Shown: piece by piece, positions 11,970 through 57,914 of the stretch | Position numbering within the stretch: position 1 is the stretch's first letter | Layout of the letters: each line of letters starts with the position of its first letter | Assembly (NCBI GenBank): GCA_950097015.1 | Contig: CATNEN010000007.1 | Span: 4,588,001-4,652,000 of the forward strand | Length of the DNA stretch: 64,000 nucleotides | Source of the DNA: Macrostomum hystrix | Taxonomy: Eukaryota > Animalia > Platyhelminthes | Direction: 5' to 3' | The notes under the pieces: model-generated | Told to the model about the DNA's origin: nothing | Database searches by the model: none | What the model saw: only the letters and a program-made list of their open reading frames with translations | Position numbers and translations under genes: made by a program

Positions 11970-12086
11970 TGCCTACCTGAGCGCACTGCTGAAGCGCACG
12001 GTGAAATCTGGCGAATCTAGCAACTGCTCAATCACCAATCAATTCAGGCTATAAACTGACAGCAGACCTGAGCCTGAGCTTCAAGC

Positions 12087-12505
12087 ATGATGGGCGTTTG
12101 GACACTCGCGCTGGTCAGTGCCGCTCTGCTGGCCTCAGCTCACAGCTCTCCAGTTGACTCACAGCGTGAGTGCCTCAGCCCAAGCCTAGCTTGGCATTGC
12201 AATTTTTGTTCTCCCATCACTGTGGAATCCCGAAACCTCTTGCAGATCAGCGCGCGGACGTGATGGATTCCTCCGACCATAGCGAACTACTCAACCAGGA
12301 GAAGCGCTACGCCGACTTTAAGAAGCGCTACGCCGATTTTAGGAAGCGCTACGCCGATTTTAAGCGCTACACCGACTTCGGGAAGCGCTACGCCGATTTT
12401 AGGAAGCGCTACGCCGACTTTAAGCGCTACACCGAATTCGGGAAGCGCTACGCCGATTTTAGGAAGCGCTACGCCGACTTTAAGCGCAACGGCGACGACG
12501 AGTGA
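12087..12505 (+). CDS. Neuropeptide precursor (exons 12087-12165 and 12246-12505)
   Basis: Exon 1 encodes signal peptide MMGVWTLALVSAALLASAHS. A phase-1 GTGAGT...TTGCAG intron joins in frame to KR-flanked YADF(K/R) x7, YTDFG and YTEFG, followed by an acidic tail NGDDE. Confidence 0.87.
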
Positions 12506-12781
12506 GGACCTAGGATTGACAGAACATTTTAACAGGTCCTGACTCAAGTGATCACAATTTAGCAGACCCGATGGCAAATGCAAAATATAAACTTGAAAGC
12601 TGAGCCGAACTTCAGGGGCATTGTACTGAGTTTCATTATGAGCACGGCCGAGGCCTTCTCTGACTCTTCTGACGCTCTCGCTTATAAAATGCAATCTAAA
12701 GTAAACGCTTGTCTGGTCACTTTGTTGATAAACTTAAACAGTTCCAAAGCCAGTATAAACTTTATAGTACAGTGAGATTAT

Positions 12782-13250
12782 CAGGTTGGTTGGTGTTGAG
12801 TGGGGTTGGTGTGGAGTGAGGTTGGTGTTGAGTGGGGTTGGTGTGGAGTGAGGTTGGTGTTGAGTGGGGTTGGAGTGGAGTGAGAGTGGTGTGGAGTGAG
12901 GTTGGTGTGGAGTGGGGTTGGTGTGGAGTGAGGTTGGTGTTGAGTGGGGTTGGTGTGGAGTGAGAGTGGTGTGGAGTGGGGTTGGTGTGGAGTGGGGTTG
13001 GTGTGGAGTGAGGTTGGTGTTGAGTGGGGTTGGAGTGGAGTGAGAGTGGTGTGGAGTGAGGTTGGTGTGGAGTGGGGTTGGTGTGGAGTGGGGTTGGTGT
13101 GGAGTGAGAGTGGTGTGGAGTGGGGTTGGTGTGGAGTGAGGTTGATGTTGAGTGGGGTTGGTGTGGAGTGAGAGTGGTGTGGAGTGAGGTTGGTGTGGAG
13201 TGAGGTTGGTGTGGATTGAGGTTGGTGTGGAGTGAGGCTGGTGTGGCGTT
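12782..13250. repeat. G/T-rich minisatellite (about 15-bp units)
   Basis: GGTGTGGAGTGAGGTT / GGTGTGGAGTGGGGTT variants. Confidence 0.9.
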
Positions 13251-14930
13251 AGGTTAGCATGTGATCTTGATCTGTGTAGTGAGTTTGATCTTGAGTATCA
13301 CATTGATTCGGTGTCCCAATGATTTTCTTTAGAACCAGTTGACGCACCAAACTGGTAAAATCGAATGGGCCAATTCTGCTACTCACAAGTAGCAAAACGC
13401 GACAACAGCGGCTGAAAATACTTCCTCACTCCTACAAAGAAGCTAGTCGCGTTCCGAGAGAAGAAATAAGAATTGAAGCGACCAAGAAAGAGCGAGTGGG
13501 GCCATTGCAGGCCAGGAGCGCAACAGCTGCGCATTTGTAGTAAAAAACCGCAGCAGGCCCGCCAAGCACACTTCAGCTGCCGCATCCGCCACCAGCTGAC
13601 CCGTTTCGCTACGCAGCCAGCGCTTCTAACAGGGCTAAAATTAGGCATCTCAGAGCCTCCCCCTCCAGTGAGTGACAGCTTTGACGCTCGCAGTAGCGTG
13701 ATTGAGCTGTTCCATTACTGACGGAGCTCACCAGAAAGCAGGAGGTACTACTGAGGTGCTGCAGGAACGTTAGAATTCCGGCCCAGAGGGTCAATTAAAG
13801 TCACTGTTTTGCTACAAAACATCGCAGCTTGCCGGGAGGAATTTATTTTTTTCTGTCGCAAATCTTGCTACAGCTGGGCAGAGCGAGTGCGAGTTTGTTT
13901 TCATTCCATGAAAAAGCAAGGCTGTAATTCGACATTTCGTAGATCTAGTCGCGAATCGACTGTCTCGGGCTCGCACCGGGGCTTCTGCAGTTAAACAAGT
14001 TTCAGGGCTGGAGCAGCCAGATGATGCTCGACTAGTCGGCCGGGATATTCTGGGATACAGCGATTTACAGGGAGCCACTGCTATCAGCTGGGTGGCAATC
14101 GGCGATATAGTTCGCTGGAAAATTGCCCTAAATATTGGGATTTTATTTCTTCAGCTACGCTAACCGTTCGCCTCCGCGATTCCTGCTTATCCCATCCGAT
14201 CCTCTCTGACCTTTCCACCGCGCGGCCTAGTTGAGGGGCCTGAGGGGAAGATGGGGGACTTGACTAAATTTACAACGAGCTGCTGCTGCTGCTGCGTAGG
14301 GAAAGCATAGAGAATGTAAGCGACTGGAGGGAGGCTGGCCAGGTTGCGGGATCGTTCAGCCCGCCGATGATGGCAAAGTTAGAACGCATTGAGGAACTGC
14401 ATAAACAATGCTGGAAACTGGAACGGCGAAACTGCGAAGCCCAGATCCCGATTTTCCTCGCTCTCCCCACTCCTTTGCGAGTTCGCCTGGCTTTCGTGCG
14501 ACCAGGGAGAGAGGAGGGAAGGGAGAGGAGGCGGATGGGGAGAAAGTCCGCTGCTAGGAAAAAGAGCGGATGAGGAGATGCGGGAGGCCAGCACAGCTGC
14601 GCGGAGGCATGGCAAGGCGATGGAGGGCCAGCGGCAGCAGCGGCAGGGCTGCCTTGGCTCACTGCCAGGACTTTGCAGAATCCATCAGCTGGTTGGGAGC
14701 CTGGGTCGCTGCGCACTTTGGTGGCAGGCCAGCTGTTGCTGGGGGACTGGTGTATGTAGGTGGGGTTAGGAACAGAAACTGGAAAGCTTTGGCCTGCTTG
14801 CAGTTGGAGATCGCTTCAATCAGTTTAGGGACTGACTGCTTTTTCTTCGCCAATGTCCTACCTGGTTTTGTGCCTTCACTCGACAGAAACACGGGTTCGA
14901 TCACTTCGCATTTCATTACCACCGCGGCGG

Positions 14931-33300: not shown

Positions 33301-35561
33301 GATGTACTTTTATCAACGCCGACTCAGTATGTCATGTGCCCTAATGTTGTGCATACTACATCGCTTGCGGCTAAGCTGTCCGACTGTTTGTCTTCGAAAA
33401 AAAAATTTTTGACTCCACCAAGGTCGGCATGCATTTTCGAGAAAACGGCAAAAAATGCACGTTTTGCACTGCATTTCCCAGTACTGCTTGATAACCGTGC
33501 ATTGCATAGAGTCGCCTTGCATAGCGTCGTGTAGCAGGCATCCGTGCCGAATTTTTGACACCACTTGCGCAGTGCAACTACCTGCCATTCAGCTGCAGTA
33601 CCGTGCAGCACGCAAGTGTAAAATCTGGCTGCGCCATATTTTACACTTGCTTCATCAGATATCAGGCGCGCGGTACACTCGCAGTCCATTGAGTCACACC
33701 TCGCTGGAAAGAACTCACCGAGTAGGAAAAAAAGACACCACCCGCGTGACAATCGATTCAGCCCTTGGGGAGCTGCGCTGGAAAATGTAACCCAAAAAAT
33801 CAGTACCTAAAAGTATGTTTTTTGCACTTTTATCATAGACTATGAGGAAATTGAAAAATCGCTTTCCTGCCTCGCCTGGGCCAGGCCTGCCCGCAACTTT
33901 TGTGTCTCAACTTTTCTCCGTGCCAGAAAAAATGTGCGCTGGAAATGAGTTTGCGTAAAATCGATTTCCAAAAAATGGCAGTTTTACGTTGCCATGGCAA
34001 CCCTCACGGGTTGCCATGGCAACCAACCGCCATAAATCGGATAACCCTATAAGTTACCTACCCAACGACACCACCCGCGAGGCAAACGGTTGAGGCAGTC
34101 TCAAATGGCGCCCAATATGCATTGAAAATGCGTGATTTTCGAGGTGTTTTCTATCTCACTACGTACGCTGGATCTTAGGTGGGGCTCACTCCGATTTCGC
34201 CCCTCGGCCTCTACCGAGGCCTCGGTGCTCGGCGCTTCGCGCCTCGCGACTCAATACTACGTTCGCCCCCAACTAGAATTCTGCTGGTTGACTCGTATGA
34301 TTTTCTTTGTAGACTTCTTACTTTTTAAGCCAATACAATTCGAATGAAAACACGTAATGATGACAAAATATTTAGTAAGTTGTTATTACAATAATTAAAA
34401 AGGATGACATTAATGTCAATTAATGAATGTGTAGGTCGAAATGTAGAACACTGTCATAACACTGGCAACTTTGTCGATCTATTGGCTCAAGGGTTCAACA
34501 AAACGTTCAAACCTGAAAGGGCCTCGTTTCAAATAACAGAATGGTGTGGATAAAATTGAAATTAATGGCACAGCATATATAAATAGTTGTAGACCTATTC
34601 ATACAAGCTGCCATGTGGATAAGCAGAAAATTATTGGCATGGATCCATGTGGATAAAATTGAAATTATCTGCATGGGACTGTGGGAATTAGCTCTGCCAA
34701 TCTTGGTGACTTAAAATGATATATATGCAATTTTATGACAGGCATAAAGAACAAATACCTAACTCATGTATTCTGTCATATCTTTTACAAACCATATTTT
34801 GGTTTCTATTTTTAGGAAGCTAGGCTTTGAAATTTTTTGTTGTACTATGCAAAGCTTAATGGGAATTAGAGTTTGATAAGAATTAAGAAAATTCAACCCA
34901 GTGTTTTATTCAGTACATGGTTTATAATAAAGTATTTTTCTACTAATATAGTTTTTTATTATATAATTAAGCTAAGAAATGGAGGCCGAAATTTAGACAA
35001 TGACCACTGCAAACCTGGCAGGTGTTCTTCGACATCACAATTGGTGGCAAGCCAGCTGGTCGCATTGTGATTGGCCTATTCGGCGGCAGCGTGCCAAAGA
35101 CTGTGAAGAACTTCAAGTCCTTAGCCGAGGGCGTCAGCCAGGAGTCAGGCGGCATCATGGGCTACAAGGGATCTAAATTTCATCGCGTCATCAAGGGCTT
35201 CATGATCCAGGGCGGCGACTTCACCAAGGGCGACGGCACTGGCGGCAAGTCCATCTACGGCGACAAGTTCAAGGATGAGAACTTCAAGCTGAAGCACTAC
35301 GGCGCCGGCTGGTGCTCGATGGCCAACGCCGGTCCGGACACCAACGGCAGCCAGTTCTTCATCACCGTGGCGCGCACCCAGTGGCTGGACGGACGTCACG
35401 TTGTGTTCGGCAAAGTGCTGGAAGGCATGAGTGTCGTGCGCCAGATTGAGACCACGCCAACCAATCAGAATGACCGGCCGGCTGAGGACGTGATCATTGC
35501 CGATTGCGGCTCGCTGCCAGTTGACGAGCCATTCGCTGTGGAGAAGGCGCCCTCAGATTGA
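30317..35561 (+). CDS. ppib: Cyclophilin B, peptidyl-prolyl cis-trans isomerase (exons 30317-30421 and 35022-35561)
   Basis: Signal peptide + KGPKVTDK spliced in phase 0 to VFFDITIGG...[16 protein letters not shown]...[16 protein letters not shown]...[18 protein letters not shown] at 35746. Confidence 0.95.
30945..32540 (+). repeat. About 150-bp direct repeat pair (30945-31090 and 32392-32540) inside the MULE-like element
   Basis: Shared CCTGCATTTAGATGCACAAAAAATGCA...TCAAAAATCTCGACGCAAGCA...GCAAGGCGGTCG. Confidence 0.85.
33313..34256 (-). mobile_element. Hairpin-rich nested insertion, possibly a non-autonomous Helentron/Helitron-like element
   Basis: Minus-strand start TATTGAGTCGCGAGGCGCGAAGCGCC, related end TACTGAGTCGGCG, 13-bp perfect stem at 33612-33650 and two GTTGCCATGGCAAC palindromes. 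Confidence 0.4.
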
Positions 35562-38068: not shown

Positions 38069-41000
38069 ATGGAGCCGCCACGCAAAGATCATCTGTATAA
38101 AAATATTCCCCAGGTACGAGTATAAATTAATTGTTCTATTTCACCCAATTCTCTTCTTCACTTTCTTCCAGAATTTTAGTTCACATCTGTCAGCAAAAGA
38201 TAGAGTATTATAGCTGGTAATATTTGAAAGATGCTCGAAACCCAAATACGAAAATTTTTGTTTCAAGTAAAAAGCAAACAATCAGTGCTCATGCCACTGA
38301 TCAAATGGCACGAGATTAAATGTTAGAGTGCCAAATCAAATAAGTTCTGAACATTTAGCATTCCCAGTAAATCATAATTAGCATTTGAAACAGCTTAGAT
38401 AAAGATTTCCTTTCTAGAATTTTTTAATATGTAGTTCATATTTTCACTAGAAATTTTTATAACCACTAAATTTATATTTTAAAATCTGCTAGCTTGAATG
38501 CTTACCTTTCACTTTAAACCTTAACCCACTAGAAACTGACTAGATACAATTAGAATATTAATGAATAGCATTAGAATTACATGGAGTAGAATTTATAGCC
38601 AATCCATGGACATATCAGCTGTGCGCTGCTTTTGTTGAAAAAATGCGCATGTGGTAGTGTGTTTTAAAGGTTTTCATTTTTGTATATACGTTTTATCATT
38701 TCTTACATTATAAAATTAGTAAAAATTTAAATATCAAAAATGTGCCAAAAAATATTTTGTTTTACTATTTACCGTCATAAAAAAATAATGCTGTAATAAA
38801 TATTTTGTTTTACTTTCTACCATGTAAATATTATTATGTAAAATGTTTCAATTTAAACAAACGCTAAGTTTTACTGTATATAAATAGCCGCAATCTGTGA
38901 CCAAAAATAAAGGAGGCCGTTCGAAAGCGCTATTCGCTGGCTACTTGCTTTACAGTGCTTTAAGAATCAGAATCATAAGTGTGTTCAAGACATAAAAAAG
39001 AGTGCCTTGTGAAAGGAGTATATTGCATTGTTCATTTTATAAGAGAGGAGAATATTGAGAACTATACTCAGAACCATACTCAGAACCATACTCAGAACCA
39101 TACTCAGAACCATCCTTAGAATTATACTCAGAATTATACTAAGAATTATACTAAGAATATTACAGAAGGGAACCTGCTAAACTCTAATCTCGGGGACGCC
39201 TAATTGACTGGAAACGCATACAGTTGCCTAATTACCGCTCGTGCAAACATATATGCTACCATTTAAGAAGTTAAAACGGCCCATTTAAGGACCGCCAGTT
39301 AAATATCTATTAAATTAAGTCAACAGCGGTGGGATCTTAATTAATAATTTTGCCCTACAACAACTTTGGTAGCATTCGGTGAAATTAGATAATTAATTAG
39401 CTTAAGAAGTAAAGACCTGGTACAACTTTGGTGGCATCATGAGATAAATACATAACAAAGAAAATAGCCCTATAACAACTTTGGTAACAGCGGTGGGATA
39501 GTTAATTTCCACCTATAACACGCATAATAGGTGCTATTGTGCCACAGACTGTCCATGGAGATCAACTAAGCTAGGTATAAATTTTCCTTCCTATCGATCG
39601 CTTATACTAAGCCAATTCCTAATATCAGTGGGTCTAGTTATCTAATATAAGATAATATAAGATATAATATAAGATAAGTTAATATAATAATATAATATAT
39701 AATATAAGTATCTAATATAAGAAATTAATTTCAAATACAATTATTCTCCTAAATGCCAACTTTACCTCGAAAATTTTGCCAGCAGCCACTGGTGCCACAC
39801 AAAGACCATCATGGACAAAGACCTGAGGTACACTGCTTTATTATTTCAATATTTTTTGCAGACGTAACATTAATGTTTGAAGGGTGACGCCTTTGTCTCA
39901 AGCTGAAGTGAATGTTTCATTCCCGCAGGTGCGTGAGATCGCAGAGAGGCTAAGAGACGGTGATTACAATTTGCTGCTGGAGCTGGTCACCAATGCTGCC
40001 CTGACCACAACCGACTGTCGAACTGTGCTGGCATTGTGCGCCAAGAGTTCGAATCTTCGTTCGCGCTGCTCAAAGAGCATTGAGTACCTGATCAGGCGGG
40101 CAGCCGATGTGCTGGGCAGTCAGGACGAGGGCGGAGACTCCGTGGCCCAGCTGGCCGCAAGAAGCGGCAACCTGGCGCTGCTGGCCCTGCTGCCAGACGA
40201 GGCGAAGTTCGTCGGCAACGGCAAGGGCGTCACCCCGCTGATGGAGGCTGCGAGGTTCAACCAACTGCGGTGCGTCAAGCACCTGATGCACCGGTTCAGG
40301 CAGAAGCGCCCAGACTTTGGCCGCTGGGAGGAGAAGCTCTGCGCCAGGAATGCCGATGGACTGACTGCGCTGGACATCGCCAAGCAGTGCGAACGACATG
40401 GACTGGCGACTGTTATTGAGATGTGAGTGCAGAGCATGGACTGGCGACTGTTATTGAGCTGTGAGTGCAGAGCATGGACTGGTGACTGTTATTGAGCTGT
40501 GAGTGCAGAGCATGGACTGGTGACTGTTATTGAGCTATGAGTGCAGAGCATGGACTGGCGACTGTTATTGAGCTGTGAGTGCAGAGCATGGACTGGCGAC
40601 TGTTGTTCAGTTGGTGTATGGTGTACTTAGGAACAGTTTAAACAGATGGTGCAGTGAGTACCAGTTTGAACAGATGGTGCAGTGAGTACCAGTTTGAACA
40701 GATGGTGCAGTGAGTACCAGTTTGAACAGATGGTGCAGTGAGTACCAGTTTGAATAGATGGTGCAGTGAGTACCAGTTTGAATAGATAGTGCAGTGAGTA
40801 CCAGTTTGAATAGATAGTGCAGTGAGTACCAGTTTGAATAGATGGTGCAGTGAGTACCAGTTTGAATAGATGGTGCAGTGAGTACCAGTTTGAATAGATG
40901 GTGCAGTGAGTACCAGTTTGAATAGATGGTGCAGTGAGTACCAGTTTGAATAGATGGTGCAGTGAGTACCAGTTTGAATAGATAGTGCAGTGAGTACCAG

Positions 41001-44000
41001 TTTGAATAGATGGTGCAGTGAGTACCAGTTTGAATAGATGGTGCAGTGAGTACCAGTTTGAATAGATAGTGCAGTGAGTACCAGTTTGAATAGATGGTGC
41101 AGTGAGTACCAGTTTGAATAGATGGTGCAGTGAGTACCAGTTTGAATAGATGGTGCAGTGAGTACCAGTTTGAATAGATGGTGCAGTGAGTACCAGTTTG
41201 AATAGATGGTGCAGTGAGTACCAGTTTGAATAGATGGTGCAGTGAGTACCAGTTTGAATAGATGGTGCAGTGAGTACCAGTTTGAATAGATGGTGCAGTG
41301 AGTACCAGTTTGAATAGATGGTGCAGTGAGTACCAGTTTGAATAGATGGTGCAGTGAGTACCAGTTTGAATAGATGGTGCAGTGAGTACCAGTTTGAATA
41401 GATAGTGCAGTGAGTACCAGTTTGAATAGATGGTGCAGTGAGTACCAGTTTGAATAGATGGTGCAGTGAGTACCAGTTTGAATAGATGGTGCAGTGAGTA
41501 CCAGTTTGAATAGATGGTGCAGTGAGTACCAGTTTGAATAGATGGTGCAGTGAGTACCAGTTTGAATAGATGGTGCAGTGAGTACCAGTTTGAATAGATG
41601 GTGCAGTGAGTACCAGTTTGAATAGATGGTGCAGTGAGTACCAGTTTGAATAGATGGTGCAGTGAGTACCAGTTTGAATAGATGGTGCAGTGAGTACCAG
41701 TTTGAATAGATGGTGCAGTGAGTACCAGTTTGAATAGATGGTGCAGTGAGTACCAGTTTAAACAGATGGTGCAGTGAGTACCAGTTTGAATAGATGGTGC
41801 AGTGAGTACCAGTTTGAATAGATAGTGCAGTGAGTACCAGTTTGAATAGATGGTGCAGTGAGTACCAGTTTGAATAGATGGTGCAGTGAGTACCAGTTTG
41901 AATAGATGGTGCAGTGAGTACCAGTTTGAATAGATGGTGCAGTGAGTACCAGTTTGAATAGATGGTGCAGTGAGTACCAGTTTGAATAGATGGTGCAGTG
42001 AGTACCAGTTTGAATAGATGGTGCAGTGAGTACCAGTTTGAATAGATGGTGCAGTGAGTACCAGTTTGAATAGATAGTGCAGTGAGTACCAGTTTGAATA
42101 GATGGTGCAGTGAGTACCAGTTTGAATAGATGGTGCAGTGAGTACCAGTTTGAATAGATAGTGCAGTGAGTACCAGTTTGAATAGATGGTGCAGTGAGTA
42201 CCAGTTTGAATAGATGGTGCAGTGAGTACCAGTTTGAATAGATGGTGCAGTGAGTACCAGTTTGAATAGATGGTGCAGTGAGTACCAGTTTGAATAGATG
42301 GTGCAGTGAGTACCAGTTTGAATAGATGGTGCAGTGAGTACCAGTTTGAATAGATGGTGCAGTGAGTACCAGTTTGAATAGATGGTGCAGTGAGTACCAG
42401 TTTGAATAGATGGTGCAGTGAGTACCAGTTTGAATAGATGGTGCAGTGAGTACCAGTTTGAATAGATGGTGCAGTGAGTACCAGTTTGAATAGATGGTGC
42501 AGTGAGTACCAGTTTGAATAGATGGTGCAGTGAGTACCAGTTTGAACAGATGGTGCAGTGAGTACCAGTTTGAACAGATGGTGCAGTGAGTACCAGTTTG
42601 AACAGATGGTGCAGTGAGTACCAGTTTGAATAGATGGTGCAGTGAGTACCAGTTTGAACAGATGGTGCAGTGAGTACCAGTTTGAACAGATGGTGCAGTG
42701 AGTACCAGTTTGAACAGATGGTGCAGTGAGTACCAGTTTGAACAGATGGTGCAGTGAGTACCAGTTTGAACAGATGGTGCAGTGAGTACCAGTTTGAACA
42801 GATGGTGCAGTGAGTACCAGTTTGAACAGATGGTGCAGTGAGTACCAGTTTGAACAGATGGTGCAGTGAGTACCAGTTTGAACAGATGGTGCAGTGAGTA
42901 CCAGTTTGAACAGATGGTGCAGTGAGTACCAGTTTGAACAGATGGTGCAGTGAGTACCAGTTTGAACAGATGGTGCAGTGAGTACCAGTTTGAACAGATG
43001 GTGCAGTGAGTACCAGTTTGAACAGATGGTGCAGTGAGTACCAGTTTGAACAGATGGTGCAGTGAGTACCAGTTTGAACAGATGGTGCAGTGAGTACCAG
43101 TTTGAACAGATGGTGCAGTGAGTACCAGTTTGAATAGATGGTGCAGTGAGTACTAGTGTGCATTCCTTTTCATTTACTGAGCATTGAAAGTGAGTGTAAG
43201 TTTCTATTCAAATCCCTATTGTTGAAGTGCTGCCTTAAATTACTACAGAGAGCTGGAGCTGCTGAAGAATGGATTAACGCAAGAAGTAAGCGGGCCATTT
43301 TCGTCTTTCTAGTTATTTTTAATTTAATGAAAAATCTATATTTTTTGCTTTCTGTGAGAAATTCCGCGGGAGAGTCTGTGAGGAATTCCATGGGAGATTC
43401 TGTGAGGAATTCCATGGGAGATTCTGTGAGGAATTCCATGGGAGATTCTGATTTAAATTGCGAGCTAGTTTAAAGGCTCTCTGCTCAGACCTGACCTTGG
43501 CATTCCAGCAACAGAAAATTCGCGAGCTTCTCGAGCAGCTTGCAACAAATGGCAACTTCGCGGAGCTCAAGAAGCTGGCTAACTCATCTAACTGCGACTT
43601 GCCCGACAGTGGCGGCAAGACGGTGCTGATGCGAGTCGCCGAGAGAAAGTCGTCCGGTCTGGAGGTGCTGAAGCTGTTTGCCAGCTTTGGCGATCCCACG
43701 GCGCCAGATGCGAATGGCTGGACCAGCCTGCACTCGGCCGCATCGGTCGGCTGGGAGGACGCCGTACGCGCTCTGACGGACGCCGGGGCGGCCGTTAACT
43801 GCGGCGACCACCGCCGCTGGACGGCCCTGATGCAGGCAGCGAGCGGCGACCACGTGGCCACCGTCAAGCTACTGCTGGATCTCGACGCCAACTGGGAGCT
43901 TCGCGATGCAGCCGAGAGCACAGCGATGTACGCTGCAGACAGGAATCGCTGCAGTTCAGCCTCCAAGCTGCTGAGCCAGTGAGAATCTTCCAGAGAAAAT

Positions 44001-48045: not shown

Positions 48046-50678
48046 TTATTTTTGTTCTTTAGTATCGCGAAGATTTTGGACAGTGAATCGGGAAGATTTG
48101 GGAGTTAGGATCGGGGCCTTCGATTATGTATATTTATATATTTTCAAAGTCTAGTTGGTACTACTATCTAATTAGGCTGCTTTCTTTCATATGTAATTGT
48201 CTTCTTTTCTCAATCCTGTAAATTTTTCTACAACAAGCATGCAGAGTGCACCAAGCAACAAGTCTATTTTTAGATGAGCGATTGATAGATTTCTAACGAA
48301 TCTGTCAATCTTTTACGCATAATTTACGCAATTAATCATATTGATATTTTACACAAAATATAGTTTAAGACAATTTTTCCTAGGCCTAATTTAAATTATA
48401 GAATAGAATAATATGAATCACAACATTTTACATTTCATGCAATCTAGCTGGGTTTGACTTTCAAAGGAAAAAGAAACACAGTAGTATATTTTACAATATT
48501 GTATGTTTATAATTTATGATACTTTTGTAATACTCATTTTAGTGATCTTCAGCCAATTCTGTTCCTTTGGTTTAAAAAAGTGTCTATTCGTATTTACTTT
48601 AGTTTAATCTAAAATATTATGTCAATAGGCCTAATCTATAAATCTATAAGACAAAGCAAAACAGAAAAGTCCTTGATTTCATTTTTTAAACAAAACCAAC
48701 TTTCCTTTAACTTTGACTTCAGGACTTTTAGAATAGTTAGAATTCACTTATAAGTTCAATTAGGCCTATAAGGTCTTATTTTACACTTTACAAAGCACTA
48801 GGCCTATACAGCATAAACATATGGTGTATAGGCCTAGCCTACTGAAAAAGCTGATTATGCTAGGCCAAACTATAAGATTTCAGACTTAAGTGCAAGTGGT
48901 TATTCAAAAAAGATTTTGGTAGTGGTTTACAATTATAGACTATAGTGTTTTTAATCTAGAATTAAGCAATTAAGCAACTTAGCAACCATATCTTTGTGGC
49001 AATAGCAAATAGTGTAGTTCCATTGGAAAACTAATTTTTAAGTTGAACTTGCGCCAGATACACATGGGAATTTAAAAAATTTATTAACTGATCTGGCATT
49101 GAAGCTTTCTCCTATGAAACTTTATATGAAATAGTTCCAGTTTTAGTGGGTGTATAAATATGTCTATAAATGTTTTTGGGGTTGTTAAGTTCAGAAAAGA
49201 AACCAGTTTGTTCCATCTACAACCACTTTCTATTGAATGGCTTCCCTGTCATGAGATAAACATACTTTGTGGTGCATAGGGAATGAGGAATTTTTTTAAG
49301 AAAAAAAATTGTTGGGTGCTTTATTTTTGGAAAAATGCAAATAAATAGGATCAAACTTCAATAGAGTCAAGGGGACCTATTGAAGATTACTCTTATTTAT
49401 GATTGGATGGCCTTTAGTCTAAAGGCTTTTGTAGGAACCCCAATACAGCAATACATAGGAATACCATACTAAGCAGGACATGGTGATTGATGGGTATGGG
49501 TCAGGTAAATTTTGTGTGAATAATAAATAGGATTAACCTTCAATAGAGTCAGGGGGACTTATTGAAGATTAATACTATTTATTAGGGCCTATTATGCGAG
49601 CTTAACTGCCTAAGGACTTTTTTGTGGATATCCAAATATATATGATTGAGTCACCATGACAATGATGACTAATGACAGCAACAACTACATTCTTGCAATA
49701 TATCTCATATTTTTGTTAATTTATTGATCCATATATAATTGCTGTTCGTAAAAGAATGTAAATCAAGACTATTTTTAATTAACTTTTCATAAAAAAGGTT
49801 AACAAACTTGTATTAATTACTTCACATATATGTTTTTAAAGTTACAGCCTATAGGCAAGCTAAAAACTTATAAAATATAGTCAGTCAACAACCCACTGTT
49901 TTCTAGTGGGTCTATGACTCAGTTGGTGAAGTTTCAAGTGTAATGGAAAACCTACAAGCGTAAAGTATTTTATAGGATCAAAGCTCATGAAGCCACTTTC
50001 TACCTTGAAGTGTCTATGGTAGAAAGTGAAAAAATAAAACAAATGGTAGTCAGTACTTAGTAGTAGTTTGTATTTTTCAGTCTTGGAGGTCATCCAGCCA
50101 TGTTAACTGTAGTTTATTGAAGTTAGTAGAGGTTAGTAGAAGCAGAAGTTGATACAGCCACATTTCTACCATAGACACTTCTTGAATTCTGAGAGAGGAT
50201 CGGTAAGATTCGATGTCAGTTATGTATATCTAAATTTCCCATGCATAGCTAGTGCAAATTAAAATAAAAAAATCACAAATGGAAATGCACTATTGCCTTT
50301 TATCTTTCTGTGCTTTTGGTTGGTATGATCATGAATTAGGCCTATCTTGACTTGATCTATGTATTTTGTAGGGGAAAACTTAGTTATATATATATTTATA
50401 GTAGGCCCCTATAACTTAAAAACAGATAACTATTTTATTTTAGTTGCATTGCTATTAATTCAAAAGTCCATCACATAACAGCAAGGTCTATGCCTTTGAA
50501 GAACTTGGATCTGATATATTGTCATTTTCCTCCTAACACTGAACCTTAGCATATTTTTTTTTCTGATAACAGCAGTTGCCATATTTGGCAAGTCAATTAT
50601 AAATTGCCTGCACGAATCCAGTGGACCAGCTAACAACTGCTTTTCCAGGTGTTCCGTTCTCCCACCCACGCAGCGTCC

Positions 50679-51572
50679 ATGTCGGCAGTGGCAGCCGCCT
50701 CGACGGCCGCTGTCATTGGCGACTCACCTCCAGTGTCGCCGCCGCCAATGTCGATTCCAATGTCGCCACTGCCTCCGCTTCCTTCGCTGACTGTGCCGGA
50801 CGAATTCCGTCGCAGTTTCGGCGTCTTTCAGCAGCGACAGCTTCTTGGCAAAGCGGCGACTTCCTCCGCCTCAGCAGCCACCAACTTACTCATCAATGGT
50901 GGCGGCGCCCGCATCGGTCCTCGCCGAGCCCGCCTCCGGGCCCGCCTGGGCCAGGAGCTGACGGAGGCCGTCAACCGGCGCCAGTCGGTGAGGGTTCGAC
51001 GCCTGCTGGAGGCCGGCGCGCCGCCCAACGTGGCGGACGGCAAGGGCCGCACGCCGCTGCACGTCGCATCGGCCAGAGGCGACCTCGACCTCGTTGACTG
51101 CCTGCTGAATTGCGGCGCTGATCCCGGCCGGGTGGACTGCGTTGGCAACACGCCGGCCAGGCTGGCGGCGGTCACCGGCCGTCTGGACCTGGTCACTCGC
51201 TACCTGGCCGCCGGTGCCACCCAGGCAGAGCTAGGCCGCAGCCCGGTGGCCCTGGCACGCGATGGCCTGGTCCGGGCCAAGCGGGCGTTCAGCCTCACCG
51301 GCGACGCTGCAGCCCTCCTGCAGGCCTACAGGGACGCTCGGTCGCTGCTGCGCACCTGCCTGGCCATTCACGAGCGCCGACCATCGTCGCCAACTTTGCC
51401 AGCTTCGGCAACGTCGGCGTTGGCATCTCTGCAGCCTCCGGAGCCGCCGCCGCGTCTGGCCTCGTCCTCGTCCTCCTCTTCGTCTACCATCTCCACCGGC
51501 GGCGGCACCACCGTCGTTGAAGCTGAAGAAGTCGACCATCTGCTGCTGCGGCTTGAAGGCTTCCGATTTTAA
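50679..51572 (+). CDS. Ankyrin repeat domain-containing protein 54-like
   Basis: GADP/GAPP-type repeats (ADGKGRTPLHVAS; DCVGNTPARLAA; LGRSPVALA) and a C-terminal EEVDHLL...F helix resembling ANKRD54 as recalled. An AG acceptor at 50647-50648 suggests an upstream exon or trans-splice site. Confidence 0.75.
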   Translation: MSAVAAASTAAVIGDSPPVSPPPMSIPMSPLPPLPSLTVPDEFRRSFGVFQQRQLLGKAATSSASAATNLLINGGGARIGPRRARLRARLGQELTEAVNRRQSVRVRRLLEAGAPPNVADGKGRTPLHVASARGDLDLVDCLLNCGADPGRVDCVGNTPARLAAVTGRLDLVTRYLAAGATQAELGRSPVALARDGLVRAKRAFSLTGDAAALLQAYRDARSLLRTCLAIHERRPSSPTLPASATSALASLQPPEPPPRLASSSSSSSSTISTGGGTTVVEAEEVDHLLLRLEGFRF

Positions 51573-56195: not shown

Positions 56196-57914
56196 TTCGA
56201 TTGTCCTTTCCAGCAGCGGCATCGGCGTGACCTGTCGTCGACTACGACTGAAAACGGCGCCGGCAGTGGCAGCGTCGACGACTTCGAAAGTCCCTTCGGC
56301 CCGCCGGCTGTCTTTGGCAAATTTTCCTCATCAGCACCGGTTTCAACCCACATGCAGTCTAGCGATGCCTTATCAGCAGCGGCCGAACCCGTCGTCGAGT
56401 CCGACCCATTGTCATCCTGGACTATTCAGTGCTGCGGCGCCACCGTCAGCATCGGCGGCGTTGTTGGCGGAGCCCGGCCGTCGACGCGTCGCCTGCTGTT
56501 GTCGCTGGCGCTTGGCCAGCTGCTGTCGCTGTTTATCTGCGGCACGGCTGTCACATCCGGCTACCTGCAGCGCTACGGCGTGAACGCCCCGACGGCGCAG
56601 TGCTTTCTCAACTACCTGCTGCTGGGACTCACCTTCGGCTCCGCGGCCTTCTACCGGCTTGGCCGCGCCGCCAGTCTGAGGGCCGCAGCCCGACGGCTCT
56701 GGTGGCGATACCTGCTGGCAGCGCTGCTCGATGTTGAAGCCAACTATCTGGTGGTCAAGGTCAGTGAAACATAACTTGTTTTCGCGAGATTAGTAATTGA
56801 TAATCCACTCGACTAATCTAGCTTCATTTTATTCTCTTAATCTGTTTCTTTACATTCCCCTTAGTCGTCTCCTTCATTCCCTTAATCCAACTCCATCTCT
56901 GTGCCTAATCCGTTTCCTTCACTTTGGGTATCCCTTTCGCTAATCTGTATCCTTTCCTACCCCTAATCCGTCTCTTTTTCTTCCCCTATTCCCTCTAATT
57001 TCCTTCTCCAATCCATTTCCCTAAATCCGTTCCCCTAATCCGTCTCCTCCAAAATCCCTTAATCCGTCTCCTCCCGTTCCCCTAATCCGCAGGCGTACGC
57101 GTACACCAGCGTGACCAGCGTGCAGCTGCTGGACTGCGCCAGCATCCCCGTGGCTCTTATCAGCTCCTGGCTGCTGCTCGGTGCCAGATTCGGCGCCTGC
57201 CACTACATCGGCGTGGCGGCCTGCGTGCTTGGCGCCGGTGGCATGGCCCTGGCGGACGTGCTGGCTGCTCAGCACGCCGGTGACGCTGCTCCGCCGGCCC
57301 CGTTGCTAGGTGACGCTCTGGTGCTAGCGGGCGGGGCTCTCTACGGCCTCTCCAACGTGTGGCAGGAGCGCCTGGTCCGCCGCTACGAGCGGCTCCTCTA
57401 CATCGGCTGCGTCGGCATCCTCGGCGCCCTGATTGGCGGAGTTCAACTGCTGCTGCTTGAGCGCAACGAGCTGGGCGCCCTGCTGGCTGGCCGGTTCGCT
57501 CCGGGCGCATCGCCAGCCGCGGCTGCTGGCGCCGCTGTCGGCTTCGCCCTGTGCATGTACGCCCTGTACTCTCTGATGCCCCTGGCGATGACCGCGGGCA
57601 GCGCCGTGCTGGTCAACCTGTCCCTGCTCACCGCTGATCTCTACGCCCTGTTCGTGGGTGTCTACCTGTTCGGCTACAGCTTTCATCCGCTGTACTTTGT
57701 AGCCTACGGAGCCATTCTGCTAGGTCTGGCCGCTTACGCCATCCGGCAGCCCCGGCTAGTGCAGGACCCGCCCGTCAGGCGTCGGTTTCTGCGGCCAACG
57801 CCCACCATCGGACCGGTTGGCACCGCTGCTGCTGCTGGCGGCGGAGTCGGTGTTCGAGGCATCAGGCGCTTCGGCAGCATCGAGGAAGGCATCGACTGTG
57901 CCAGGAGTAGCTAG
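56175..57914 (+). CDS. slc35f: Solute carrier family 35 member F1/F2-like transporter (exons about 56175-56759 and 57093-57914)
   Basis: LGQLLSLFICGT, NAPTAQCFLNY, DVEANYLVVK|AYAYTSVTSVQLLDC, GDALVL.G..LYGLSNVWQE and NLSLLTADLY. The intron is phase 0. The start is uncertain because it lies in the last repeat unit. Confidence 0.9.

What the first reader, a model, noticed from the sequence alone, without database searches (positions are those of the whole stretch)
12087..12505. Neuropeptide precursor releasing the tetrapeptides YADF, YTDFamide and YTEFamide, invisible to the ORF track
The signal peptide sits on a separate 79-nt exon, so the ORF track mis-starts this gene. The spliced product has nine KR-delimited peptides: YADF x7 (four with an extra basic residue that carboxypeptidase E would trim) plus YTDF-G and YTEF-G (amidation signals). 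They are built from a 60-nt module repeated about 2.7 times. One precursor would therefore co-release free-acid and amidated versions of the same Y-x-(D/E)-F core. I do not recognise this as a named family (it is not RFamide, allatostatin A or similar).
Basis: partly seen in the sequence, partly recalled or inferred. Interest (0 to 1): 0.75.

Follow-up and report, generated by a model that had tools for sequence, protein, structure and literature searches.

The report
Flatworm YADF tetrapeptide precursor gene
This is very probably a real small flatworm gene for a secreted precursor that is cut into nine tiny signalling peptides, one of at least three sister genes, and its nearest described relatives are the little-studied 'AxxxDF' peptides of ribbon worms and lamp shells.

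Summary
A 79-nt signal-peptide exon (12087-12165), an 80-nt GT..AG intron and a 260-nt exon (12246-12505) join in frame. The product carries nine peptides flanked by basic residues: YADF x7, YTDF-Gly and YTEF-Gly. They lie in exactly three 60-nt modules.

The genome matches the published Macrostomum hystrix assembly (220 Mb, 42 contigs).

The splice model has no RNA evidence. It is supported by two intact paralogues on other contigs, found here: FADY/FANY/FADF x5 on C38, and about 32 copies, mostly FADF, on C1. Both have the same layout: a 76-79-nt signal exon, a phase-1 intron, an acidic spacer, then repeats. Their signal peptides and spacers have diverged, but the [FY]-A-D-[FY] peptide and its basic flanks are kept.

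No relative turned up in three word searches, one full HMMER search or Pfam.

It is neither the achatin nor the fulicin/EFLamide gene; canonical genes for both lie elsewhere in this genome. The closest named family is AxxxDF (ASWLDF, AKFNDF) of nemerteans and brachiopods (Thiel et al. 2021). That family is also multi-copy, non-amidated and ends in aromatic-x-D-F, but its peptides are hexapeptides starting with Ala.

Verdict: a new variant of a known kind. Expression, processing and neuronal function are inferred, not shown.

The parts
12050..12055 (+). TATAAA motif 31 nt before the ATG; a possible core promoter element
   Evidence: Read. A motif match only; no test of function. The two paralogues were not checked for a matching element.
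12087..12165 (+). Exon 1 (coding part): start codon plus a 26-residue signal peptide, ending in a phase-1 donor (C|GTGAGT)
   Evidence: The hydrophobic core has a 12-residue Kyte-Doolittle mean of 2.23. Ala-Ser-Ala at residues 16-18 fits the -3/-1 rule for signal peptidase (by inspection; no predictor was run). Exon 1 is 79 nt in the C38 paralogue and 76 nt in C1a, and the intron is phase 1 in both.
12166..12245 (+). 80-nt intron, GTGAGT...TTGCAG
   Evidence: Canonical splice sites. Removing it joins the signal peptide in frame to the repeat exon. Splicing is inferred, not seen in RNA.
12246..12301 (+). Acidic pro-region (spacer) between the signal peptide and the first KR
   Evidence: translation. 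It is rich in D, E and S and contains no peptide copy. It aligns loosely with the spacers of the paralogues (alignment A1).
12302..12361 (+). Module 1: KR-YADF, K-KR-YADF, R-KR-YADF
12362..12421 (+). Module 2: KR-YTDF-G (amidation donor), KR-YADF, R-KR-YADF
   Evidence: The pattern R-[FY]-x-[DE]-F-G-K-R has only four matches in the genome. Two are in this gene; the other two are chance matches, one reading Ser for Arg and one holding a stop.
12422..12481 (+). Module 3: KR-YTEF-G (amidation donor), KR-YADF, R-KR-YADF
12482..12505 (+). Last KR, five-residue acidic tail (NGDDE) and TGA stop

Best explanation
A real two-exon gene of a Macrostomum flatworm (the assembly statistics match M. hystrix) encodes a 112-residue secreted precursor of the prohormone type.

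Inferred mechanism:
1. The signal peptide from exon 1 takes the chain into the secretory pathway.
2. Proprotein convertases cut after each KR.
3. A carboxypeptidase E-type enzyme trims the leftover K or R.
4. Peptidylglycine alpha-amidating enzyme converts the two Gly-extended copies.

The expected products are seven copies of YADF (free acid), one YTDF-amide and one YTEF-amide.

The gene belongs to a family of at least three intact genes in this genome. All release [F/Y]-A-D-[F/Y] tetrapeptides: YADF here, FADY/FANY/FADF on contig C38, and about 32 copies, mostly FADF, on contig C1.

The most likely role is a neuropeptide or peptide hormone acting on an unknown receptor. The family is plausibly the flatworm form of the spiralian AxxxDF peptides, shortened at the N-terminus.

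Shown: the sequence anatomy, the paralogues, the selective conservation of the peptide, and the presence of the processing-enzyme domains in the genome.

Inferred: splicing, expression, cleavage, amidation, the cell type, and the link to AxxxDF.
For: 1. Anatomy: canonical splice sites, an in-frame join, a signal peptide, an acidic spacer, and nine copies each preceded by KR.

2. Paralogues with the same structure.
- C38: a 79-nt signal exon with a GTGAG donor, phase 1, a 1,022-nt intron, then a spacer plus five KR/RKR-flanked peptides ending in a stop.
- C1a: a 76-nt signal exon with a GTGAGT donor, phase 1, a 1,362-nt intron, then 32 copies, 21 of them FADF.

3. Selective conservation. The signal peptides are only 24-25% identical. 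The six-codon unit K-R-[FY]-A-D-[FY] is kept, with differences at Arg and Asp synonymous sites (CGC/CGA/AGA, GAC/GAT) and Y/F swaps. This is the usual signature of a peptide precursor.

4. A decayed sister array shows what happens without constraint. C1b has 105 units, 47 linkers with an in-frame TAG and 6 with a 1-nt deletion. The window gene has none of these defects.

5. The motif is confined to these loci in 220 Mb, with 0 hits for the reversed control.

6. The genome encodes PHM-type Cu2_monooxygen domains and proprotein-convertase P domains.

7. The nearest clusters in the ESM Atlas are mainly multi-copy neuropeptide precursors: MIP/prothoracicostatic peptide, allatostatin A, tachykinin, FLP-1, PBAN and pro-TRH. 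Scores are 0.78-0.84, so this is a lead only.

8. AxxxDF precursors of nemerteans and brachiopods share the design. Mass spectrometry supports that precursor in Lineus longissimus.
Against: - No RNA or peptide evidence of any kind.
- No homologue outside this genome in any search, so conservation across species is untested.
- This genome is full of 16-24-nt minisatellites that give open periodic frames, and the family itself has spawned one (C1b).
- The three modules are 95% identical, so within-gene variation says little about selection.
- Only 2 of 9 copies carry Gly.
- Linkers such as KKKR and KER in the C1a paralogue are unusual for neuropeptide precursors.
- Signal-peptide cleavage was judged by eye; no predictor was run.
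- The link to AxxxDF rests on a four-residue core.
Confidence: 0.65

Rival explanations
1. The precursor is real and is processed as described, but the peptides are not neuronal. They would be products of a gland or the reproductive tract, for example a seminal-fluid, pheromonal or defensive secretion, made with the same convertase machinery.
For: Nothing in the sequence fixes the cell type. The very high copy number and Lys-rich linkers of the C1a paralogue fit bulk secretion as well as signalling. The family expands and decays fast (C1b), as lineage-specific secreted products often do. No orthologue was found outside this genome.
Against: Multi-copy short peptides between dibasic sites with Gly amidation donors are overwhelmingly neuropeptides or hormones in animals (established knowledge). 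The nearest language-model neighbours are neuropeptide precursors. The closest described family, AxxxDF, was found in neuropeptide surveys (PMC8557429).
Confidence: 0.18
2. There is no functional gene. The repeat would be one more translated minisatellite, or a young pseudogene, that happens to lie behind an ATG with a hydrophobic stretch.
For: Most 'matches' to the exon-2 protein in this genome are 21-nt minisatellites read as protein. A 16-nt minisatellite starts 280 nt downstream (12788-13255). The sister array C1b is clearly degenerate. The opposite strand is also open across the repeat (12287-12694).
Against: - Three loci on three contigs share a 76-79-nt signal exon, a phase-1 intron and a repeat exon, while differing at synonymous sites.
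- Unit lengths of 18 and 21 nt vary but always keep the frame.
- The window gene has no stop and no frameshift.
- The array ends cleanly in a stop five codons after the last KR.
Confidence: 0.07
3. It is a secreted structural repeat protein rich in Lys, Tyr, Asp and Phe, for example an eggshell or adhesive component. It would be used intact and not cut into peptides.
For: The composition is periodic and rich in charged and aromatic residues. Flatworm eggshell and adhesive proteins are repetitive and rich in Tyr and Lys (my own knowledge; not tested here).
Against: Every unit carries a perfect KR site. Two units have Gly directly before KR. The paralogues replace Tyr by Phe freely (C1a is almost all FADF), which argues against cross-linking through modified tyrosine (DOPA). 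The window protein is only 112 residues long.
Confidence: 0.05
4. It is this flatworm's orthologue of a classic D-amino-acid peptide family, either achatin (G-F-A-D type) or fulicin/EFLamide ([FY]-x-E-F-[VL]-amide, TRH-type).
For: FADF shares the F-A-D core with achatin-I. YTEF-amide resembles the x-[ST]-E-F core of the fulicin-type peptides. Fulyal is Y-dA-E-F-L-amide (recalled from memory; the references are listed in PMC4721866).
Against: Both slots are filled by canonical genes elsewhere in the same genome.
- MSEFV-G x8 on C14 and [G/E]PVSEFL-G x23 on C34.
- R-GYFN-KR and R-GFFN-KR 36 nt apart on C30.
In addition, the N-terminal Gly of achatin and the C-terminal aliphatic amide of fulicin are both missing here.
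Confidence: 0.04

Closest known systems
AxxxDF peptides (ASWLDF in nemerteans; AKFNDF, AKFVDF and AKFFDF in the brachiopods Lingula and Glottidia), Thiel et al. 2021, PMC8557429, supplementary proneuropeptide list
   Same: - A signal peptide, an acidic pro-region and many copies between KR sites.
- No Gly, so the peptides are free acids ending in Asp-Phe.
- An aromatic residue three positions before the end: F-N-D-F and W-L-D-F there, F/Y-A-D-F here.
- Brachiopod copies are packed head to tail in 8-residue units (KRAKFNDF), the same unit length as the KKKRFADF unit of paralogue C1a.
- The animals are spiralians.

   Different: - Their peptides are hexapeptides that start with Ala. Here the two N-terminal positions are basic residues, so the product is a tetrapeptide.
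- The window gene adds two amidated variants with Thr and Glu.
- The C38 paralogue ends in Tyr.
- The conserved C-terminal domain of the nemertean precursors is absent.
- The paper describes the peptide from nemerteans and brachiopods only.
Fulicin / FVamide / FLamide / EFLGamide (protostome TRH-type) peptides
   Same: Short, multi-copy peptides with an acidic residue followed by Phe. YTEF-amide and YTDF-amide resemble the x-[ST]-E-F core of MSEFV-amide in this same genome. PMC11004728 groups TRH and fulicin as one receptor family. PMC3890597 lists 'fulicin related' FLa and FVa/EFLGa precursors.
   Different: Those peptides are all amidated and end in an aliphatic residue after Phe. Seven of the nine copies here are free acids ending in Phe. 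Canonical family members exist elsewhere in the genome.
Achatin (G-[FY]-x-[DN] tetrapeptides with a D-residue at position 2)
   Same: A non-amidated acidic tetrapeptide between dibasic sites, in several copies. FADF shares the F-A-D core with achatin-I.
   Different: No N-terminal Gly. The aromatic residue is at position 1, not 2. There is an extra C-terminal aromatic residue. A separate achatin-type locus lies on C30. Only GdFFD, not all-L GFFD, is active in Aplysia (PMC4721866). Whether any residue here is isomerised is unknown.
Other multi-copy tetrapeptide precursors noted in this genome (APFW x22, note s1-344301)
   Same: A non-amidated tetrapeptide in many copies, in the same animal.
   Different: An unrelated peptide sequence. 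I did not examine that locus.

Membership tests
Multi-copy prohormone / neuropeptide precursor (general kind) | N-terminal signal peptide | tested here: met
   Hydrophobic core and an A-x-A site in exon 1. Judged by inspection and hydropathy only. The paralogues have the same feature.
Multi-copy prohormone / neuropeptide precursor (general kind) | Each copy flanked by dibasic convertase sites; Gly before the site where the peptide is amidated | tested here: met
   All nine copies are preceded by KR and followed by (K/R/G)KR or KR. Two of the nine carry Gly.
Multi-copy prohormone / neuropeptide precursor (general kind) | Processing enzymes present in the organism | tested here: met
   PF01082 (PHM-type monooxygenase domain) has 8 matches and PF01483 (convertase P domain) has 13 matches in the genome. 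The domain matches do not tell PHM from dopamine beta-hydroxylase-like enzymes.
Multi-copy prohormone / neuropeptide precursor (general kind) | Transcribed and spliced, with peptides detectable in neurons or secretory cells | not testable with these tools
AxxxDF (ASWLDF/AKFNDF) family | Multi-copy, KR-flanked, non-amidated peptide ending in Asp-Phe, with an aromatic or hydrophobic residue at -4 | tested here: met
   Seven YADF copies here and 21 FADF copies in C1a, compared by eye with the sequences listed in PMC8557429 supplement 1.
AxxxDF (ASWLDF/AKFNDF) family | Hexapeptide with N-terminal Ala (A-x-x-x-D-F) | tested here: not met
   The peptides here are tetrapeptides. The two positions in front are K or R.
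AxxxDF (ASWLDF/AKFNDF) family | Sequence homology of the precursor outside the peptide, such as the conserved C-terminal domain of nemertean precursors | tested here: not met
   The window protein stops five residues after the last KR. Brachiopod sequences in the list are incomplete at the C-terminus, so this domain may not define the whole family.
AxxxDF (ASWLDF/AKFNDF) family | No other, canonical AxxxDF gene in the same genome (which would make orthology unlikely) | tested here: met
   The pattern R-A-x-[F/W...]-x-D-F-K-R gives one match in 220 Mb, with a stop inside it; the reversed control gives 1. The pattern is strict and catches only this exact form of a copy, so absence is not proven.
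Fulicin / EFLamide (TRH-type) | x-x-E-F-[L/V/I]-amide: an amidated C-terminal aliphatic residue in every copy | tested here: not met
   The copies end in Phe, and 7 of 9 have no Gly. Canonical genes lie on C14 and C34.
Achatin | G-[F/Y]-x-[D/N] with N-terminal Gly | tested here: not met
   No Gly at position 1. A separate locus on C30 has R-GYFN-KR and R-GFFN-KR. The stricter Asp form is absent from the genome.
Achatin / fulicin-type D-amino-acid peptides | L-to-D isomerisation of residue 2 | not testable with these tools
   This needs peptide chemistry.
FMRFamide-like / RFamide peptides | C-terminal Arg-Phe-amide | tested here: not met
   The C-termini are D-F-OH, D-F-amide and E-F-amide.
Fungal Kex2-processed repeat (RiPP or pheromone) precursors | Fungal genome with neighbouring tailoring enzymes | tested here: not met
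   The assembly size and contig number match a flatworm assembly. Pfam scans of 20 neighbouring ORFs show no such enzymes.

The most novel reading that the evidence does not exclude
The [F/Y]-A-D-[F/Y] genes of Macrostomum are true orthologues of the AxxxDF peptides. That family would then be an ancestral spiralian signalling system that reaches flatworms, not a nemertean and brachiopod innovation.

In flatworms the two N-terminal residues would have turned into basic residues, moving the cleavage site and shrinking a hexapeptide to a tetrapeptide.

In the window gene the residue just after the peptide reads Lys (AAG), Arg (AGG) or Gly (GGG), codons one step apart. It would therefore catch the birth of amidated peptides (YTDF-amide, YTEF-amide) from free-acid ones inside a single precursor. 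The new amidated forms converge on the [ST]-E-F core of the fulicin-type peptides and might address a second receptor.
Probability: 0.3. Interest if true: 0.6.

Novelty: new variant of a known kind. Interest (0 to 1): 0.45.

Why it matters
Flatworm neuropeptide catalogues are still incomplete, and the short precursor genes are often missed by gene callers; this one is invisible as a simple ORF. A three-to-four-gene family of free-acid tetrapeptides would add an uncharacterised signalling system to a transgenic model genus.

If the link to AxxxDF holds, a peptide described so far only from nemerteans and brachiopods becomes an old spiralian system. That would give receptor deorphanisation a comparative handle.

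The locus also shows a coding repeat turning into a minisatellite (array C1b). And it shows amidated and free-acid versions of one core side by side, a possible route by which new peptide chemistries arise.

None of this is surprising in kind: multi-copy precursors are textbook. The value is as a well-defined candidate, not a new principle.

Tried and rejected
- **Word searches.** Three runs: window exon 2; C1a exon 2, whose only hit P0001 is a KSRT(M/T)DF repeat from a metagenome and not related; and the three-paralogue alignment A1. No relatives.
- **Full HMMER search of 1.84 billion representatives**. It gave 68 hits at E <= 0.001. The 15 whose repeat regions I read, and a motif screen of all 68, showed periodic repeats or translated minisatellites without dibasic-flanked aromatic-x-acid-aromatic peptides. 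P0044 (KR-PSEFL-KR x ~12, with a signal peptide) is another peptide precursor with a different motif.
- **Pfam on both exons:** nothing.
- **Own-genome protein search:** 169 'matches', but apart from C38 and C1 the ones I translated are 21-nt minisatellites.
- **Literature string searches** for YADF, YTEFamide, KRYADF, FADF and similar returned only unrelated uses, such as the E. coli yadF gene and personal names.
- **Planarian prohormone paper** PMC2953531: the main text has no ADF, TDF, TEF or AEF string, and the 8 supplements have none of RYADF, ADFK, DFKR or EFGKR.
- **Platynereis catalogue** PMC3890597: no ADF or ADY in the text.
- **Tandem achatin pattern:** swamped by minisatellites, with the reversed control higher than the real count.
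- **Fungal ustiloxin-like RiPP precursor:** considered early because of the Kex2-like repeats and the short intron. Dropped once the genome proved to be a flatworm's.
- **Opioid-like reading** (Tyr1...Phe4 as in YGGF): noted from memory. The paralogues replace Tyr1 by Phe, so it was not pursued.
- **Bacterial-type promoter and terminator scan:** uninformative for a eukaryote.
- **Structure prediction:** not run, because a 112-residue cleaved repeat precursor has no fold to compare.
- **Joined exon1+exon2 protein:** never submitted to any tool. The exons were searched separately by reference.

Full report
**What is in the sequence**

- An ATG at 12087 opens a 79-nt exon that ends C|GTGAGT at 12165/12166.
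- An 80-nt intron ends TTGCAG at 12245.
- A 260-nt exon runs to a TGA at 12503-12505.
- The two exons sum to 339 nt, so the join is in frame. The intron is phase 1 and the junction codon is C|AT.

Exon 1 codes for 26 residues with a hydrophobic core and an Ala-x-Ala site. Exon 2 codes for an acidic spacer and then exactly three 60-nt modules (12302-12361, 12362-12421, 12422-12481). Each module holds three peptides. Module 1 gives YADF x3. Modules 2 and 3 give YTDF-Gly or YTEF-Gly, then YADF x2.

Every peptide is preceded by Lys-Arg. The residue between a peptide and the next KR is absent, Lys (AAG), Arg (AGG) or Gly (GGG).

Tandem Repeats Finder reports period 60, 3.1 copies and 95% matches. 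The mechanical ORF list does split the gene.

**What genome this is**

The window is C7:4588001-4652000 of a 220,453,370-base assembly in 42 contigs. The abstract of Wiberg et al. 2023 gives about 220 Mb in 42 contigs for Macrostomum hystrix (PMC10468722). Notes of other agents on this genome also call it a Macrostomum flatworm. I take the taxon as M. hystrix on that basis. I did not test it phylogenetically.

**Is it a gene or a translated minisatellite?**

This was the main risk. A six-frame search of the genome with exon 2 gave 169 matches, and most of those I translated are 21-nt minisatellites read as protein. Two loci are different.

- **C38.** A 79-nt exon codes for a start codon plus a signal peptide and ends G|GTGAG. 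It is followed by a 1,022-nt intron filled with a minisatellite, and then an exon that continues in phase 1. That exon codes for an acidic spacer and KR-FANY, RKR-FADY, RKR-FADY, KR-FADF and RKR-FADY, then RKR and a stop.
- **C1 ('C1a').** A 76-nt signal exon ends G|GTGAGT. It is followed by a 1,362-nt intron and then a phase-1 exon of 282 codons with 32 copies: FADF x21, FANF x3, FTDF x2, one YADF and a few variants. The linkers are mostly KKKR or KKR.

So three genes on three contigs share the layout of signal exon, phase-1 intron and a single repeat exon. Their signal peptides are only 24-25% identical. Their spacers align loosely. Yet the unit K-R-[FY]-A-D-[FY] is kept, while the Arg codons (CGC, CGA, AGA) and Asp codons (GAC, GAT) differ.

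A strict DNA pattern for two adjacent R-[FY]-A-D-[FY] units hits 98 times at these loci only, and never for the reversed control.

A fourth array just downstream of C1a ('C1b', C1:4881509-4884110) shows what the repeat looks like without coding constraint. It has 105 units of 24 nt, of which 47 linkers carry an in-frame TAG and 6 a one-base deletion. The window gene has no such defect.

Together this makes the splice model and the coding status well supported in silico. No RNA evidence was obtainable.

**How it most likely works**

The architecture is that of a prohormone. The sequence of events, all inferred, would be:
1. Signal peptide removal.
2. Cleavage after KR by proprotein convertases.
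3. Trimming of C-terminal K or R by a carboxypeptidase.
4. Amidation of the two Gly-extended copies.

The expected products are YADF x7, YTDF-amide and YTEF-amide.

The genome carries the domains this needs: PHM-type Cu2_monooxygen with 8 matches and the convertase P domain with 13 matches. The protein language model places exon 2 nearest to clusters of prothoracicostatic peptide/MIP, allatostatin A, tachykinin, FLP-1, PBAN and pro-TRH precursors. The scores are only 0.78-0.84, which the tool rates as a lead only.

Cell type and receptor are unknown. A glandular or reproductive secretion made by the same machinery cannot be excluded.

**Relatives elsewhere**

- Pfam finds nothing.
- Three word-index searches of 5.8 billion clusters found no relative: window exon 2, C1a exon 2 and the three-paralogue alignment.
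- The full HMMER scan of 1.84 billion representatives returned 68 hits. The ones I inspected, and a motif screen of all 68, show periodic repeats or minisatellite translations with no dibasic-flanked aromatic-x-acid-aromatic peptides.
- Even the window's own protein is absent from these collections. The blank therefore partly reflects missing annotation of small flatworm genes, not proven rarity.

**Comparison with known families**

*Fulicin/EFLamide (TRH-type).* The amidated copies resemble x-[ST]-E-F. But this genome has canonical genes of that family: MSEFV-Gly x8 on C14 and [G/E]PVSEFL-Gly x23 on C34. This agrees with earlier notes s1-262252 and s1-316771. PMC3890597 lists FLa and FVa/EFLGa as fulicin-related precursors, and PMC11004728 groups TRH and fulicin as one receptor family. 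The window gene lacks the C-terminal aliphatic amide, and 7 of its 9 copies are free acids.

*Achatin.* FADF shares F-A-D with achatin-I. But the N-terminal Gly is missing, and an achatin-type locus with R-GYFN-KR and R-GFFN-KR lies on C30 (note s1-313522). The Asp form KR-G[FY]xD-KR is absent.

*AxxxDF.* This is the closest described family. Thiel et al. [quoted passage not shown] Their supplementary list shows multi-copy precursors with KR-ASWLDF-KR in nemerteans (variants ATWLDF, ASWLDM and ASWIDT) and KR-AKFNDF-KR in Lingula and Glottidia (variants AKFVDF, AKFFDF and AKVNDF).

These share several features with the Macrostomum genes:
- the free-acid C-terminus Asp-Phe;
- an aromatic residue three positions earlier (F-N-D-F, W-L-D-F versus F/Y-A-D-F);
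- acidic spacers;
- in brachiopods, head-to-tail 8-residue units (KRAKFNDF), the same length as C1a's KKKRFADF.

They also differ:
- they carry an N-terminal Ala-x dipeptide, so they are hexapeptides and not tetrapeptides;
- nemertean precursors have a conserved C-terminal domain that is absent here;
- they have no amidated or Tyr-ending variants.

A strict search for R-A-x-[F/W]-x-D-F-K-R found no canonical AxxxDF gene in this genome: one match with a stop inside it, against one for the control. The slot is therefore not visibly filled by another gene.

Homology therefore rests on a short core and on architecture, and I put it at about 0.3-0.4.

**Verdict**

The interpretation as a spliced, secreted multi-copy peptide precursor is well supported by comparative anatomy within the genome, but it is unproven at the RNA and peptide level. 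It is not a lone orphan: it is one of three intact paralogues plus one decayed array. It is distinct from achatin and from fulicin/EFLamide. It is best filed as a new variant of a known kind, with the AxxxDF peptides as the nearest relatives.

Interest is moderate. It is a clean candidate for a flatworm signalling system, possibly an old spiralian one, with a nice internal contrast between free-acid and amidated copies. It is not a new principle.

Noticed in passing
G000:C1:4881509-4884110 (L026): A decayed sister array ('C1b') lies about 1.7 kb downstream of paralogue C1a. It has 105 units of 24 nt reading RFADFKKK, with an in-frame TAG in 47 linkers and a 1-nt deletion in 6. Only the first seven copies are open, behind a phase-1-type acceptor, and no signal exon was found within 1.8 kb. 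A coding peptide repeat seems to have become a minisatellite or pseudogene.
   Followed up: partly
G000:C34:~1846120-1846980, minus strand (L033): An open frame of 286 codons holds 23 copies of KR-[G/E]PVSEFL-G-KR, giving predicted GPVSEFL-amide and EPVSEFL-amide. This is an EFLamide/fulicin (TRH-type) precursor. Its signal exon was not located.
   Followed up: partly
G000:C14:1158045-1158441 (L034:5046-5441): Eight copies of KR-MSEFV-G-KR, some separated by HADRKR, giving predicted MSEFV-amide (fulicin-like). Already noted by the scan (s1-262252).
   Followed up: partly
G000:C30:2227041-2227096, minus strand: R-GYFN-KR and R-GFFN-KR lie 36 nt apart. This is an achatin-type precursor with Asn in place of Asp.
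   Followed up: partly
window 12788-13255: A 16-nt minisatellite (GGTTGGTGTGGAGTGA, 29 copies, 86% matches) starts about 280 nt after the stop codon of the gene. The introns of both paralogues also hold minisatellites.
   Followed up: no
window 35022-35561 (+), 57111-57914 (+), 50649-51572 (+): ORFs with clear Pfam matches: cyclophilin (E 2e-50), SLC35F solute carrier (E 2e-55) and ankyrin repeats. They are ordinary neighbours with no evident link to the peptide gene.
   Followed up: no
window 40638-43163 (-): An 841-aa ORF scores on DUF2157, FmdE and DUF5714, but no single matched stretch passes on its own. Together with the strong GC skew at 40-44 kb, this looks like a low-complexity or repeat artefact and not those domains.
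   Followed up: no
P0044 (public protein, 196 aa, source not shown): It has a signal peptide and about 12 copies of KR-PSEFL-KR (variants PSGFM and PSTFI). This is an unannotated multi-copy peptide precursor with a non-amidated x-S-E-F-L core, found by chance in the HMMER search.
   Followed up: no
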